Assembly (NCBI GenBank): GCA_951804945.1
Contig: OX638149.1
Coordinates: 19,034,001 to 19,098,000 of the forward strand
From: Podarcis cretensis
Lineage: Eukaryota
Length of the DNA stretch: 64,000 bases
Direction: 5' to 3'
The notes beneath the pieces were generated by a model. The model saw only the letters and a list, made by a program, of their open reading frames with translations. It searched no databases and was not told the DNA's origin. Positions 18,485 to 45,300 of this stretch are shown one piece after another (positions within the stretch are counted from its first letter, which is position 1; each line of letters begins with the position of its first letter). Position numbers and translations under genes: made by a program.

Positions 18485-19379
18485 CTTACCTTAGTGCAGG
18501 TGAGCCTGGGGCTTTCCAGGTGTTATTGGCCTCCTGTCAGCCCCAGCCAGTGACCCTCCAATGTCGTTGGACTACAATTCCCACCAGCCCCAGCCAGCAT
18601 GGCCAATGGTCAGGAATGATGGGAGCTGGAACAGAGCCAGGTCTCTGCTATGGGGGCTGTAGCAATACTACCTTTCCCCACAATGCAGATAACACGAAAG
18701 GCACATAGCTTTGCTCAGTGACCCCGGGGTTTTCCTCTTCCTCAGTTTTCCAAGGCTCTGCTCATGTGGTTCCAGATTTCCTATGCTGGTGCTTCTCCCC
18801 GTGCCCCCCCCCAAAAAAAAAATAGGTGGCGGAACTCACCATGAAGTTGTTAAAGTATGTCACCAGGTGACTCAGAGCAGCCCTGAACAGGCGCCAGTTT
18901 GACAACAGCTACGTTCACCACCTGTGGAGGTGCTGAAAACTATGCCAAGCTGCCTCCCTAGCTGGTTTGGGGGTCACCCCAGGTTCCGGCACAGGTCAAA
19001 TAAATATGCCCCCACCTCCCTCGTTCTCTTAGATTCAGGCAAATGGCCAGGGCAGCTCAGAAAGGCTACTGTCTCCACCCCCCATCGTTCTACCCGGACA
19101 CTGAGGTCCAGCACCGAGAGCGTTCTGGCAGTTCCCTCACTGCGAGAAGCTAAGCTACAGGGAACCAGGCGGAGGGCCTTCTCGGTAGTGGTGCCCGCCC
19201 TGTGGAATGCCTTCCCACCAGATGTCAAAGAGAACAACAACTACCAGACTTTTAGAAAACATCTGAAGGCAGCCCTGTTTAGGGAAGCTTTTAATGTTTG
19301 ATGTGTTACAGTATTTTAATATTTTTTGGGAAGCCGCCCAGAGTGGCTGGGGACAGCGGCGTAGCGTGGGTTGTCAGCA

Positions 19380-19525
19380 CCCGGGGCAAGGCAAGTAATT
19401 TGCACCCCCTAACCCGGGGCAAGGCAAGTAATTTGTGCCCCCTAACCTGGGGCAAGGCAAGCAATTTGCACCCCCTAACCCAGGGCAAGGCAAGTAATTT
19501 GCGCCCCTAACCCCTAACCCCTAAC
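19380..19525 (+). repeat. 33-bp tandem repeat x4 followed by (CCCCTAA)-type repeats
   Basis: Unit CCCGGGGCAAGGCAAGTAATTTGCACCCCCTAA starting at 19380, 19413, 19446 and 19479. Confidence 0.92.
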
Positions 19526-19858
19526 CTGCCGCCGCTGCCAGCTTCTTCTTGCTGCTGCCTGGGCTGGGGTATTTACGGTAAGGTAGCCACGGCGGCGGTG
19601 GTGGGTCCGTGTCAGGTGATCTGAGGCGAGTTGCCGCTGGCGCTGCTGCCCAAACGACGCCGCTTGCCCGGAGGAGGAGGAGGGCAGAGAGGTGAGGAAA
19701 ATGCAACATGGCCCAGCAGCTGCAGCGGCGGCGGCAGCAGGGCTGTGAGGAGGCCCTCCGCGGCCCTGATGCGCGGGGACCGCGGAGAGCGCTGAGAGCC
19801 GCTGCCTGCCGGACGCCTTCAGCCCGGACGCGTGCACAGCTTGTCGGTTCCGCGAGAC

Positions 19859-19912
19859 ATGGGGCTCTGCTACAGCCTGCGCCCGAGGCTCTTCGGCGAC
19901 TCCGGAGGCGGT
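19859..19912 (+). pseudogene. GNAL: Captured fragment of GNAL XL-isoform (XLGalpha-olf) first coding exon
   Basis: Translates MGLCYSLRPRLFGDSGGG; the recalled human XLGolf N-terminus is MGLCYSLRPLLFGG (12/13 identical). No further GNAL sequence; lies inside the hAT element. Confidence 0.8.
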
Positions 19913-20063
19913 GAGCACGCCCACCCAGATGTTGCGGCCGGTGCGGCCGGCCCCCCCTGCACCCCCCACGCTATGCCACTGGCTGGGGAAGCCCAGCCAG
20001 ATGGGCAGGGTATAAATAATAAATTATTATTATTATTATTACTGTATTATTATTACCCATGTG

Positions 20064-20283
20064 CACTGGCAGACGAAGGTGGGGGCGGGGGGGTGGTCTG
20101 CCCCAGCTGCCATCCCAGGGGGTTGACGTCACGACTGCCCCCCGGGACGCTCGCCGCTTGCAGGGCATACCCCGACACACACCACACCCTCCATGGGTTG
20201 CGCGTCACGCCCCTGGGACACATGCCAGCCACGCCCCCAGATTTATGCCGCTCCCGGTGCTGGAGCAGGTAGCTCCACCACTG
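20064..20283. mobile_element. hAT-type MITE
   Basis: 8-bp TSD CCCATGTG (20056-20063, 20284-20291); degenerate CA(C/G)TGG termini. Confidence 0.75.
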
Positions 20284-21267
20284 CCCATGTGTGCTGGCAA
20301 GCTTAAAGCCTGCCACCAGTACACAGGAGATGAATGGAAGAAAAGCAAATACAAACTGCCCACTCTACCCCGTAGCTTGACCAATTGCAGCCAGGAGAGG
20401 CTAGGAGCTAGATCTTCAAATAGTGCAGGCGCGCACATGCTAGCCAGCTTCTGTTTTGACTTGAAATGTTTGTTTTGGGCTTCTCAGAAGTACGTGAAGG
20501 CAAGAAACAGCTAGGGTGAGTGTTGGCCTGCAATGGCCTCCCACCTGAGAGGCTGAAGAAAAGCACTGCTAGAGGACCAGGCTACGCTGGCAACCCTTTG
20601 TGCATTTACATTGGACACGTGCATCTTTATCTTCCTGCTCTTCTCCTCTGCAGAAAGAGTTAAGTGGAACTTGGTACTTCAGGGTTATCTGGAACTCTTG
20701 TTTACAAGCAATAAACATTCTACCATTCCTGGCTGATATATATGGTCAATACAGACCTGGAGAGCTGTGTATAAAATAGCCTTTTAAGTCTTCTCCAATC
20801 CATAGTGTTTCATTGACAAGGAGAAAACATCAAAGGCTGAACTGATGCCAGACCCCAACATTTCCATCTAATATGCTGTTGCCAAACTCACCAGAAATTC
20901 AAATTTTCATGGGGGGGGGGGGCATTAGCTCTTTATGCTTTAAATAGGCTGACAGGTGGAATAGTGATGGTAGCTGGGCTTGTGCGGCACAATGAATGGA
21001 AAATGTAATAAAATATAAATAAAGCCAGACGTTAAAGTGTGGGGGCAAGGTGAGGGCATGTTGCAAATTTGTTATTTAAAAGCAGGAATGCCTGACCTGT
21101 TGCCTTTCAGATGTTGTTGGATTGCAGTTGCCTTCAGGTACATTGGCTAGCATGCCCAATGGTCAGGGATGATGGCGGTTGAGTCCAGCAACATCCGGGA
21201 AGGTACTCCTGGCTGTTATAGATAGCCATCTCCAGCCATGCTCAAAGGTGGCCTTTGAAAGGAACTG

Positions 21268-31817: not shown

Positions 31818-31860
31818 CAGTGGCGTAACGTGGGTTGCCAGGGCCTGGGGCAGTGTGGAG
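31818..31860 (+). mobile_element. Left end of a hAT element related to the one at 19354
   Basis: CAGTGGCGTAACGTGGGTTGCCAGGGCCTGGGGCA versus CAGCGGCGTAGCGTGGGTTGTCAGCACCCGGGGCA; right end not found. Confidence 0.6.
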
Positions 31861-42250: not shown

Positions 42251-42308
42251 ATGTCCCGCCGCAAGCAGGGGAACCCGCAGCACTTATCACAAAGGGAAAT
42301 TATCACGC
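42251..42308 (+). CDS. BCL11B: BCL11B coding exon 1 (N-terminal NuRD/RBBP4-binding motif)
   Basis: ATG at 42251 translates MSRRKQGNPQHLSQREIIT+C, followed by canonical donor GTAAGT at 42309 (phase 1). Matches the recalled BCL11B N-terminus (human MSRRKQGNPQHLSQRELIT); BCL11A has GKPQHLSKREF. Confidence 0.97.
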
Positions 42309-45300
42309 GTAAGTTGCAACTCTTTCAAAGGAGCCGGATCGGAAAGGAAAGTGGTGTTTCTATGTGTGTGTTGGGAGGAGAGCAGTGATGGGAAGTTGGG
42401 GTGCGTTTGTGCGCGTGGTGTGTGAAGCTGACCGGGAAAGATTGGAGAAGGGGTGTGTTGTGCGTAAAGTGAAGGGTCTTGGAGAGTTTGCAAAGCATTG
42501 GCGCGGGGGGGACGACGGTGGCTGACGGGGAGAGGGGAGTCGAGGAGAGAGAGAAGCGGGGGGCCGGCAGGATAGGTGTTCTGGAAAGTAAAGTTTGCAG
42601 GGTAACGGAGGAGGCCGCGAAGCCGGCTGAGAGCGGCCGAGGCGAGCTGGGGACGGCGGGGAAGACGGCCGGGTGGGGGATCCGCAGCAGGGACTTCCAG
42701 ACGAGAGGCTGGGTTGGAAAGGCTGGTCCAAAGTTGGCGAGCACGCGAGAGCAGCAGCCGGAGCGGCAGCGGCGGCAGCCGAGAAGAGGAAGGTGGCTGG
42801 AGTCGGGGCTGGAGCGGGGGGAGCCTTAATGGGAACCACATGCAAGGGACGCCTGGCAGGCCGGCGAGGGAGCGGCGAGGCCGGTCTGGGGAGCCGGGAG
42901 AGGCGGAGGCGGCGCGCGGAAGGCGAGGTTGGGTGTGTGTGTGTTGGGGGGAGATCTAGCGACGGGGGTCTGCATCTCCCCCCATCCCGGCTTGGTACCG
43001 GAGACATAACAGGACCGGGCGTTGGGGAAGGGGCCGAGAGAAATGTCAGTGTACAGGTAGACCGGCAGGCGGGCGGGAGCCTTTTGCTCGACTCCCCCCT
43101 GGGCAAGGTCCGGCTGCCCTGCCCAAAGCGCAAGGTAGCTTTTGTATGCATTTATGCATGTGCTAACCTTGCTGCAAAATGGTGTGTGTGGGTTTTTTTT
43201 TTTGGGGGGGGGAGACAGACAGGGAAGGGGTACATTTTGCGTGCACGTTGCAAAGTAAAGTAGCAGCAATTTTTTTTTTGCAAAGTGAAGCGCGCGCACA
43301 GTTTGCAAAGCGGCGAAGGAGTCCTGCAAAAAGGCGCGCCACTTTTGCAAAAGAGCGAGGTGGTAGGATCTCATCGTAGTAGCAAAAAAGCAGCCCAAGG
43401 CAGCAGTGTATTGAGGGGTAGAAGCGATCTAGAACGAGGTGTTCCTTTCACAGGAGCCGAGGGTGGTGTATGTGTTGTGTATGGTGGTGGTGGGAATCCA
43501 GGCCCAGAGTTGCCTGTATAGGGGTCCAGATCCGGGGTGGGTGGTGTCAGTCTTCCTTAGTATCAGCTTCGCTTTGCAAACATCTCCTGCCCTGCTAATA
43601 ATGAAGGACAAAAACAAAGCACCCAAACTCTGCTCCTCTTTATTTCGCTTCTGCCCACTCCGCTATTTCCAACATTGAAATGCAATGGAAACCCAACACA
43701 CCTAAAGGTTGCGCCTTGAAGGTTTGCAGGCAGCAGGGATTGGTGCATTTTGCTCTCCTGACCTGGGTGATCAATAATAATCATTTTTTATTTTATTTTG
43801 GAGGCTAGTTTCAGAATTAAAAAATAAGAATAATGCAAGGGAAGGAAATCGGCCTCTGTTCCTGTTAATGGGGCGGTGGGGGTGGCGCGGAGGGAGGGAG
43901 AAAAAAAGGAGAAAAATCACAGCCCCAAACATAACGCCAAAAAGAACAGCTCCCTTTGCACGCTTGGCTTTTGCAAAGCAGCCGTTGCGCGTGTGGAGCC
44001 GGGCGAGCGGAGAAGGGGGGGGGGGCGCAGTGTGTGAGAGAGAGAGGGGGAAGAGAAAGAAGCAAGAGGGAAGGGGGCCGAGCCGGAGAGGATGTTGGGG
44101 GGGGGGCGCATAGAGAGAATAATAGAATATGTATGTTATATTTCTTAAAAATTTAAATAAATATATATATATATAGCCCGGCGTCTCCCCTCCCCCTTGA
44201 AAGCCTAAGACTAGCAGCCATCTGCCAGCAGCATTTGGTGACAGCGCTCTCTCTCTCTCTTTCCTTTGTTACAGCTGATAAAAATTGTTGTTTGTAACAA
44301 TACATCGGAATTATATTGATTGGCGAATGCTGCCGTTCGACCTTGGACGGTGCTTGGCTTGCGAATTTCATTTTTTCCCTCTCTCCACTTTTATTTTCTT
44401 CTTCTTTTCCTTCCTCTCCTCTCCTCTCCCCCCTCAAAAAACCCAACCCTTTCTTGCCACCCCCTCTAAAAACAACAACAAAAAAAGCCTTTATTAACCA
44501 GCTGCAACAGCACCAATGAAGATGCGTTGGTTGATTTTGAACACTGTTTTGCAACCGGGGAGTTTGACGGTGCTTGCCGAACCATGGGGGGGGGGGGCGG
44601 AAGAGTGGATTTTCTTTTCTTCTACTTTTTAATTTTTCCGAAATAACACACCAAACCTGTAACACCTTTCGACCAAACTGTATTTTTCTCTTTCTTTTTC
44701 CCCATTAAGAAAACCTAGCCGGATTGTAAATTGGGGAGTTGTTGATTCACCCTCCTTTTTTATTTTTTTAAAAAACCAACAAGATCCAGATTATTTCATG
44801 TAACTCTATTCCCCCCCCCCGTGTAGTTTGCATGGGGGACTTTGCTTGTTTGAGGTTGTGTGTATGTAATGTATGTGAAAAAGGTAAGGCAGACAGTATT
44901 GTGTGGAGATAATAGAAAAAGGAAAGAGGCATGTTTGCAAATGTTCCAAATTTTAATTGGCGTGAGGTTAGTCAGGTGGGATTCTTCCTGATTTCCAGCT
45001 CTTTCCCACCAACTCCCCCACTATGAATTTTTTTTTTGGGGGGGGGAGAAGTATATGTAATTTGGAATTGGGTACCAGGTGGGTGTTAAGTATAATGGAA
45101 GGATACCTTTAAACATCTGCCTGAACAGTGTGGCTCAGTGGGGAGGAAGGTTTAGAAGGGAGAAAAACCATAGCCAGGTCTTTTTCTCTGTTCCCCTATT
45201 CATCCTCCCATCTGGAAAGGACTTAACAACAGGACTGACTGAGGTCTCTTAAACTAAGGTTAAGGCAAAAGGGAAGACGATAGATGGGCATAAATCATGT

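What the first reader, a model, noticed from the sequence alone, without database searches (positions are those of the whole stretch)
19354..19981. Pack-type hAT transposon that has captured the GNAL (XLGalpha-olf) start region and landed upstream of BCL11B
Seen in sequence: 16-bp TIRs, a perfect 8-bp TSD (hAT signature), insertion into a young L2 tail, and a ~390-bp CpG-rich interior with no transposase similarity, containing ATG-19859 MGLCYSLRPRLFG. Established knowledge (recalled): the GNAL long isoform begins MGLCYSLRPLLFG, GNAL is not a BCL11B neighbour in mammals, and capture of GC-rich gene 5' ends by TIR elements is well known in plants (Pack-MULEs) but rarely reported for vertebrate hATs. 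Inference: a lizard non-autonomous hAT family is picking up and moving host first-exon/CpG-island fragments.
Basis: partly seen in the sequence, partly recalled or inferred. Interest (0 to 1): 0.9.

Follow-up and report, generated by a model that had tools for sequence, protein, structure and literature searches.

The report
Lizard hAT transposon carrying GNAL start
A 628-base non-autonomous hAT transposon, one copy of a family present in roughly thousands of copies in related lizard genomes, carries the start codon and first 18 codons of the long isoform of the host G-protein gene GNAL; this copy sits inside a retroposon 22 kb upstream of BCL11B and shows no sign of function.

Summary
Positions 19354-19981 are a hAT-type element with 17-nt inverted ends (15/17) and a perfect 8-bp target-site duplication. 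It carries a 33-bp subterminal tandem array and a CpG-rich interior with no Pfam match.

The central claim was tested at protein level. The element's ORF start, MGLCYSLRPRLFGDSGGG, matches 18 of 18 residues at the N-terminus of annotated GNAL (G(olf) alpha) isoform X1 in five lacertids (Zootoca, Lacerta, three Podarcis). Other squamates, birds and turtles differ at residues 14-18. The likeness stops exactly after codon 18 (19912). The motif is ancestral in vertebrates, so the transfer went from gene to transposon.

This locus is not a fresh capture. Contigs of two related organisms show the same interior at depths suggesting about 10^3-10^4 copies. This copy differs from the family majority mainly by CpG decay. 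One old capture in the lacertid lineage was followed by amplification.

The scan met this family before on other DNA (s1-835084), with the GNAL origin left untested.

The closest analogues are vertebrate Pack-hATs and the bat HelibatN3/NUBPL Helitron.

The parts
19346..19353 (.). Left copy of the 8-bp target-site duplication GCTGGGGA
   Evidence: Read. Intact copies of the host repeat have a single GCTGGGGA (tables 5 and 7).
19354..19370 (+). 5' terminal inverted repeat CAGCGGCGTAGCGTGGG
   Evidence: pair I3; 3 matches in the window, 0 expected.
19379..19513 (+). Subterminal tandem array, 4.1 units of 33 bp, ending in short CCCCTAA-like repeats that run to 19526
   Evidence: period 33, 89% matches.
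19527..19858 (+). G+C- and CpG-rich interior of untested origin. It could be GNAL 5' UTR or promoter DNA. The in-frame stretch upstream of the ATG is open for 21 codons, and the ATG has a purine at -3 and G at +4.
   Evidence: (CpG o/e 0.85), (no Pfam family). Depth is lower at 19710-19857 than in the rest, and a deletion variant joins 19566 to 19858.
19859..19912 (+). GNAL long-isoform (XL exon 1) start codon and first 18 codons, MGLCYSLRPRLFGDSGGG
   Evidence: Matches 18/18 residues of lacertid GNAL isoform X1: P0138, P0225, P0226, P0228, P0233, P0234. tblastn E = 7.7e-8 within the window. First lead was P0004.
19911..19916 (+). GTGAGC at the junction between the GNAL-derived part and the transposon part. 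It resembles a splice donor; use is not shown.
   Evidence: Read from the sequence. Inference only.
19913..19964 (+). 3' subterminal region of the transposon. It has no likeness to GNAL and contains TGCACCCCC, also found in the 33-bp unit.
   Evidence: D11; native reads SISS..., the element reads EHAHPD....
19965..19981 (-). 3' terminal inverted repeat (reverse complement CAGTGGCATAGCGTGGG)
   Evidence: The family majority has C at 19974, which restores CAGTGGCGTAGCGTGGG (table 3).
19982..19989 (.). Right copy of the target-site duplication GCTGGGGA
19079..20055 (+). Host repeat that received the insertion: a very high-copy, 5'-truncated retroposon 3' part with an (ATT)n tail, split by the element
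   Evidence: Depths are 10^6-10^7 in X1. Loose ends at 19079 show that other copies continue upstream.
31818..31852 (+). Lone 5' end of a related element (35 nt, 83% identical to 19354-19388). No matching 3' end was found.
42251..42310 (+). Context only: start of a BCL11B-type first exon (MSRRKQGNPQHLSQRE...)
   Evidence: The motif was recalled from memory.

Best explanation
Positions 19354-19981 are one copy of a high-copy, non-autonomous hAT (MITE-like) family of lacertid lizards. The family moves by cut-and-paste, using a transposase supplied in trans, and makes 8-bp target duplications.

Its internal region contains a piece of the host gene GNAL: the start codon and first 18 codons of the long-isoform (XL) first exon. 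Probably some of the CpG-rich 5' UTR upstream came with it. The piece was acquired once, in the lacertid lineage. The likely mechanism is template switching or gap repair during transposon replication or excision repair; this is inferred. The element was then amplified to about 10^3-10^4 copies.

This copy landed in a retroposon tail 22.3 kb upstream of the BCL11B start. It has since decayed at CpG sites like methylated, neutral DNA. No function of this copy is shown.
For: hAT anatomy:
- Ends beginning CAG, 17 nt long, 15/17 complementary, with an 8-bp duplication.
- Intact paralogous host repeats show the exact empty site.
- A 33-bp subterminal array.
- No protein family match in any ORF.

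GNAL origin:
- A phmmer scan of 1.84 billion representatives gave one relevant hit starting at residue 1. It is a thrush Galpha XL-exon protein, P0004, E = 9.4e-4.
- Its relatives are named GNAL/G(olf) in many vertebrates and carry the Galpha domain.
- All six lacertid GNAL isoform X1 entries begin MGLCYSLRPRLFGDSGGG followed by SISS. That is 18/18 with the element.
- Elgaria, Varanus, geckos, Anolis, agamids, birds and turtles differ at residues 14-18.

Direction: MGLCYSLRPRLFG is shared from sharks and fish to birds, so the gene is the donor.

Family and age:
- Interior depth in X1 is 60,000-750,000 against about 65 for the unique flank. The interior is also deep in X8, a different organism.
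- There are 70-105 distinct contigs per interior position.
- Element 5' ends are preceded by unrelated flanks (table 7, place 19354, agreement 0.36).
- Of 11 listed places where the family majority differs from this copy, 9 are CpG-to-TpG or CpG-to-CpA changes in this copy.
Against: The match to GNAL is shown only for the 18-residue translation. The native GNAL DNA could not be fetched, so the 5' limit of the captured piece is unknown. The upstream 330 bp may have another source.

Copy numbers are read from summed contig depths, which the tool warns are not copy numbers.

No autonomous partner element was found in the window.

Organism names were coded, so the taxonomic spread of the family is not named.

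The list of differences is truncated (211 rows not shown), so the decay estimate is rough.
Confidence: 0.85

Rival explanations
1. Only the 54 coding bases (plus a few bases around the ATG) come from GNAL. The rest of the CpG-rich interior (19527-19858) is the transposon's own sequence or comes from another source. On this reading the element carries a tiny gene scrap, not a promoter or first-exon unit.
For: Nothing ties 19527-19858 to GNAL. A family variant joins 19566 directly to 19858, one base before the ATG. Depth over 19710-19857 is 3-6 times lower than on either side, so many copies lack that part (tables 2 and 5).
Against: The ATG keeps a good initiation context, and the region is CpG-island-like, as expected of a first-exon flank. 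A capture starting exactly at the ATG would be a coincidence. The variant may be a secondary internal deletion.
Confidence: 0.3
2. The likeness to GNAL is chance, or the bias of a G+C-rich ORF.
For: The interior is G+C-rich and has open frames in several phases. The other phmmer hits were low-complexity repeats.
Against: The 18/18 identity begins at the ATG and includes C, Y, F and a lineage-specific DSGGG found only in lacertids among about 15 sauropsids compared. tblastn against the window finds no other comparable match.
Confidence: 0.01
3. The transfer went the other way: the GNAL long-isoform start in lacertids was supplied by a copy of this transposon.
For: None beyond the shared 18 residues.
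Against: The same N-terminus, in one uninterrupted exon with the rest of the XL exon, is present in sharks, fish, amphibians, turtles, birds and mammals.
Confidence: 0.01
4. The capture happened recently, at this locus or in this copy (a fresh Pack-hAT event upstream of BCL11B).
For: The target duplication is perfect and CpG content is still high.
Against: The same interior, including the bin with the GNAL codons, is present at thousand-fold depth in two organisms. The scan's earlier follow-up saw the same family elsewhere (s1-835084).
Confidence: 0.02

Closest known systems
Pack-TIR / Pack-hAT elements of animals (Tan et al. 2021, PMC8277862), for example Pack-hAT-N8_XT of Xenopus tropicalis carrying 291 bp of the CAPSL 5' UTR
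   Same: Both are non-autonomous hAT elements with inverted ends and a target duplication, and both enclose a fragment of the 5' end of a host gene. Both were moved to new loci by transposition.
   Different: That survey found only 4 multicopy cases among the Pack-TIRs of 100 animal genomes, and its worked example has three copies. The depths here point to about 10^3-10^4 copies in at least two organisms. This cargo also includes a start codon and 18 codons.
HelibatN3 Helitrons of vespertilionid bats carrying the NUBPL promoter, six N-terminal codons and a splice donor (PMC4778049)
   Same: A host gene's 5' end with its start codon and a few codons was captured once and amplified to high copy. 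A donor-like GT follows the codons.
   Different: HelibatN3 belongs to a different transposon class (rolling-circle rather than cut-and-paste hAT). In bats, promoter activity and chimeric transcripts were shown experimentally. Here neither is shown, and the donor-like site lies at the capture junction, not at the gene's own donor.
Pack-MULEs of plants
   Same: Both involve capture of G+C-rich gene fragments between inverted repeats of a DNA transposon.
   Different: Pack-MULEs belong to a different superfamily (Mutator, 9-bp duplication, long inverted repeats) and occur in plants.
hAT MITEs with subterminal repeats (Ds1-like elements, Drosophila Mar; PMC3517528)
   Same: All are short, high-copy and without coding capacity. 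They have an 8-bp duplication, short inverted ends and subterminal repeats.
   Different: Those elements are not known to carry a host gene start.

Membership tests
hAT superfamily (non-autonomous member) | 8-bp target-site duplication | tested here: met
   GCTGGGGA lies on both sides. Intact host repeats have it once.
hAT superfamily (non-autonomous member) | Short terminal inverted repeats (about 10-25 bp) beginning CAG / YARNG | tested here: met
   17-nt arms, 15/17 complementary, starting CAGYGG.
hAT superfamily (non-autonomous member) | An autonomous partner with the same ends that encodes a hAT transposase | not testable with these tools
   None is in the window. The lizard genome could not be searched.
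MITE-like non-autonomous family | Short (<800 bp), no transposase, high copy number | tested here: met
   628 bp; no Pfam match; interior depth is 10^3-10^4 times the unique flank in X1 and also high in X8.
Pack-TIR (transduplicating TIR element) | Internal sequence derived from a host gene whose parental copy lies elsewhere | tested here: met
   18/18 residues match the lacertid GNAL isoform X1 N-terminus. No Galpha domain is in the window. This was tested on the translation only.
Pack-TIR (transduplicating TIR element) | Nucleotide-level alignment of the cargo to the parental locus, with defined breakpoints | not testable with these tools
The 3' breakpoint is placed after 19912 from the protein comparison; the 5' breakpoint is unknown.
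GNAL (G(olf) alpha) gene or pseudogene copy | Remainder of the XL exon and the Galpha domain | tested here: not met
   Only residues 1-18 match, and the rest of the ORF is unrelated. It is a fragment, not a gene copy.
Promoter/first-exon-dispersing transposon (HelibatN3-like behaviour) | Transcripts that start in copies and splice into host exons | tested here: inconclusive
   RNA reads over the interior scale with genomic copy depth, and no start pile-up was reported. No non-GNAL protein of 293-931 aa with this N-terminus appeared among cluster representatives. Both tests are weak.

The most novel reading that the evidence does not exclude
The family may act as a portable first exon. Thousands of copies would spread a CpG-rich 5' region and a well-placed ATG. 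The first 17-18 residues, MGLCYS..., fit the N-myristoylation consensus (Gly2, Ser6) and have a Cys4 that could be palmitoylated. A donor-like GTGAGC was created at the capture junction. Copies landing in or upstream of genes could then start new transcripts or give membrane-anchored chimeric proteins, as HelibatN3/NUBPL does in bats. This would be the first such case for a cut-and-paste transposon in a vertebrate.
Probability: 0.1. Interest if true: 0.8.

Novelty: new member of a known kind. Interest (0 to 1): 0.5.

Why it matters
Gene-fragment capture by DNA transposons is well documented in plants. In animals it is known mostly as single-copy cases, and the one survey read here found only four multicopy ones in 100 genomes.

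This lacertid family moved the start of a signalling gene to about a thousand or more loci. That gives a natural experiment on whether dispersed first-exon or CpG-rich fragments seed new promoters, upstream ORFs or chimeric N-termini.

It is also a practical warning for annotation. Each copy offers an ATG with a perfect 18-residue match to GNAL, which can mislead gene predictors and homology searches.

For this particular locus the likely consequence is nil. The copy sits inside a retroposon 22 kb from BCL11B and decays like neutral DNA.

Tried and rejected
- **Peptide in the literature.** A full-text search for the peptide start found no paper. A search for the end motif found only unrelated primers.
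- **Other phmmer hits.** The three better-scoring hits (P0001-P0003) are long repetitive proteins matching the Gly/Ala/Pro-rich tail, not relatives.
- **RNA use.** In raw RNA reads of organism E, coverage of the interior is low. It is roughly proportional to genomic copy depth (about 2-3 reads per 1000 units of DNA depth, as for the host retroposon). No start or end pile-ups were reported. This gives no evidence that copies act as promoters. There is a 7-10-fold strand bias toward the sense strand over 19562-19635 and 19858-19931, which I could not interpret.
- **Chimeric proteins.** A search for annotated proteins of 293-931 aa carrying the 18-residue N-terminus returned only GNAL orthologues. 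This is a weak negative, because only cluster representatives are scored.
- **Second copy.** No 3' end or target duplication was found for the related 5' end at 31818, so it says nothing about other cargos.
- **Orthologous empty site.** Not decidable. Both flanks are repeats, and organism E does not align to the unique flank.
- **Human entries.** The human GNAL entries returned were left aside and not used as queries.

Full report
**1. What is in the sequence**

The stretch 19354-19981 (628 bp) has 17-nt inverted ends. They read CAGCGGCGTAGCGTGGG at 19354-19370 and, as reverse complement, CAGTGGCATAGCGTGGG at 19965-19981, which is 15/17 complementary. With up to 3 mismatches the motif occurs three times in the 64-kb window against none in 100 shuffles. 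The element is flanked by a perfect 8-bp direct repeat, GCTGGGGA, at 19346-19353 and 19982-19989.

Inside, from the 5' end:
- a 33-bp tandem array of 4.1 units at 19379-19513, ending in short CCCCTAA-like repeats;
- a G+C-rich interior at 19526-19915, with 69% G+C and CpG observed/expected 0.85, against 0.33-0.40 in the flanks;
- a 52-bp 3' subterminal stretch.

No ORF of the interior matches a Pfam family.

**2. The insertion is real**

The element interrupts a very high-copy retroposon 3' part (19079-19353 and 19990-20055, with an (ATT)n tail). I laid Logan contigs and reads of four runs on 18600-20800. Hundreds of records match up to 19353 and then continue AACCCAGCCAGATGGG..., which is the sequence that here follows the second GCTGGGGA. 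Contigs in two organisms skip 19346-19985. Intact copies of the host repeat therefore carry GCTGGGGA once. That is the expected empty site for an 8-bp duplicating insertion.

This copy is 5'-truncated at 19079. It differs from its family majority at about six listed places in 275 bp.

**3. It is one copy of a large family**

In run X1 (organism A), a contig matches the unique flank 20546-20800 without a single difference at depth 65. This is probably the source species or a very close relative. In that run the summed contig depth over the interior was:

| Stretch | Summed depth in X1 |
|---|---|
| 19414-19709 | 356,000-750,000 |
| 19710-19857 | 60,000-116,000 |
| 19858-19931 (holds the ATG and 18 codons) | 350,000 |

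Seventy to 105 distinct contigs cover each interior position. In X8, a different organism that does not align to the unique flank, the interior is also deep, 1,500-41,000 against about 5.

The tool warns that summed depths are not copy numbers, so I read them only as an order of magnitude of 10^3-10^4. Reads of element 5' ends are preceded by unrelated sequence (place 19354, agreement 0.36), as expected of many insertion sites. Variants exist: one joins 19566 to 19858, and the depth dip suggests that many copies lack about 19710-19857.

Seven coded organisms from 11 studies hold about half or more of the sampled words of 19200-20150. That stretch also contains the host repeat, so this figure does not describe the element alone.

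It reached the same high-copy conclusion and left the GNAL origin untested. Other first-reader notes in this genome (s1-835234, s1-832938, s1-836700) may be further copies; I did not check them.

**4. State of this copy**

Within the element, one search lists 11 places where the family majority differs from this copy:
- Seven are T here and C in the majority, each followed by G (19599, 19602, 19647, 19693, 19833, 19842, 19974).
- Two are A here and G in the majority, each preceded by C (19404, 19917).
- Two are transversions (for the contexts).

So nine of eleven are CpG decay in this copy, the pattern of methylated, unconstrained DNA. The change at 19974 restores a 3' end reading CAGTGGCGTAGCGTGGG. 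The table is truncated, so these counts are minimal. None of the listed differences falls in 19859-19912.

**5. Is the cargo from GNAL?**

The ORF at 19859 starts MGLCYSLRPRLFGDSGGG and goes on EHAHPD....

- A phmmer scan of the 41 in-element residues against 1.84 billion representatives gave one relevant hit beginning at residue 1. This was P0004, E = 9.4e-4.
- P0004 is a Turdus protein, KAF4788897.1, labelled XLas-like. Its sequence is an XL-type Galpha first exon read through into the intron.
- Searching with it returned 120 relatives from sharks to mammals. Nearly all begin MGLCYSLRPRLFG (non-mammals) or MGLCYSLRPLLFG (mammals). The named ones are mostly GNAL/G(olf). P0010, an owl "G protein subunit alpha L", joins this start to a complete G(olf)-type Galpha domain.
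- A further search brought in squamate GNAL isoform X1 proteins. The cluster of the Zootoca entry holds Podarcis muralis, P. lilfordi, P. raffonei and Lacerta agilis.
- All six lacertid entries begin MGLCYSLRPRLFGDSGGG and then SISS.... The element matches 18 of 18 residues, and the likeness ends exactly after codon 18 (19912).
- Other sauropsids differ at residues 14-18: Elgaria EPGAGGG, Varanus EPGTAGG, geckos DPGAA..., Anolis EGGGG, agamids EAGTGG or TGEPGG, birds DAGGG, turtles DPGGG.
- tblastn of the Podarcis protein against the window finds only this start, and no Galpha exon.

The conclusions are these. The 54 bases are GNAL-derived. The gene is the donor, because the motif is ancestral to vertebrates. 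The source was a lacertid-type GNAL.

That region is CpG-island-like. The ATG has G at -3 and G at +4, and the frame is open for 21 codons upstream. These features are compatible with a captured 5' UTR but do not prove it.

**6. Mechanism**

Shown: the hAT-type ends and duplication, the family amplification, the GNAL-derived start, and the neutral-looking decay of this copy.

Inferred: mobilisation in trans by an autonomous hAT that recognises the ends and the 33-bp subterminal repeats. Also inferred is a single capture by template switching or gap repair in a lacertid ancestor, followed by a burst of transposition.

The junction creates GCG|GTGAGC at 19908-19916, a donor-like site. From established knowledge of N-myristoyltransferase, the captured MGLCYS fits the myristoylation consensus (Gly2, Ser6), with a nearby Cys. 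Whether any copy is used as a first exon is not shown:
- RNA coverage follows genomic copy depth.
- No non-GNAL protein of 293-931 aa with this start appeared among cluster representatives.

Both tests are weak.

**7. Comparison with known systems**

Tan et al. 2021 (PMC8277862) reported 370 Pack-TIRs in 100 animal genomes, 208 of them hAT. Only four were multicopy. Their worked example, a frog hAT-N8_XT carrying 291 bp of the CAPSL 5' UTR, has three copies. This element is the same kind of thing but appears amplified by about three orders of magnitude.

The nearest behavioural analogue is HelibatN3 of bats. That Helitron family captured the NUBPL promoter, six codons and a splice donor, was amplified, and makes chimeric transcripts (PMC4778049).

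Membership in the hAT superfamily is met for the duplication and the ends. The autonomous partner is untested. Pack-TIR status is met at protein level only.

**8. Verdict**

It is wrong in its framing as a local or ongoing capture, and the position upstream of BCL11B (start at about 42251) looks incidental. It is a new member of a known kind, notable for its copy number.

Papers on the family itself were not found, and Repbase/Dfam could not be consulted, so the family may already be catalogued without its GNAL piece having been noticed.

Noticed in passing
window 31818-31852: A lone 5' end of a related hAT element (CAGTGGCGTAACGTGGG..., 83% identical over 35 nt to 19354-19388). It is followed by unrelated sequence, and no 3' end or duplication was found within 4 kb.
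   Followed up: partly
window 19067-20299 and flanks 18808-19066 / 20300-20523: Contigs of organism A join 19040-19066 directly to 20299-20300. The whole block (retroposon, nested hAT and 244 further bases) is therefore itself an insertion into an older, lower-copy repeat. Near-identical 16-nt direct repeats (CCCATGTGCACTGGCA / CCCATGTGTGCTGGCA) lie at 20056-20071 and 20284-20299. Unexplained.
   Followed up: no
proteins P0117-P0122: A second, shorter XL-type Galpha first exon begins MGLCYSLRSRLAAAHPS... and ends ...KQTHRLLLLG. It comes from unnamed ENA/Logan contigs with very G+C-rich introns. It may be a paralogue of the GNAL XL exon in some vertebrate group.
   Followed up: no
window 19858-19931 and 19562-19635, RNA run X23: Reads over the element interior show a 7-10-fold excess of first mates on the - strand, more than the 1.6-fold excess seen over the host retroposon. 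This could reflect sense transcripts of copies or of native GNAL. It was not resolved.
   Followed up: no
table 5c (joints 19981 to 19354): In organism A some contigs run from an element 3' end through 26-37 unrelated bases into another element 5' end. Copies therefore sometimes sit almost back to back.
   Followed up: no
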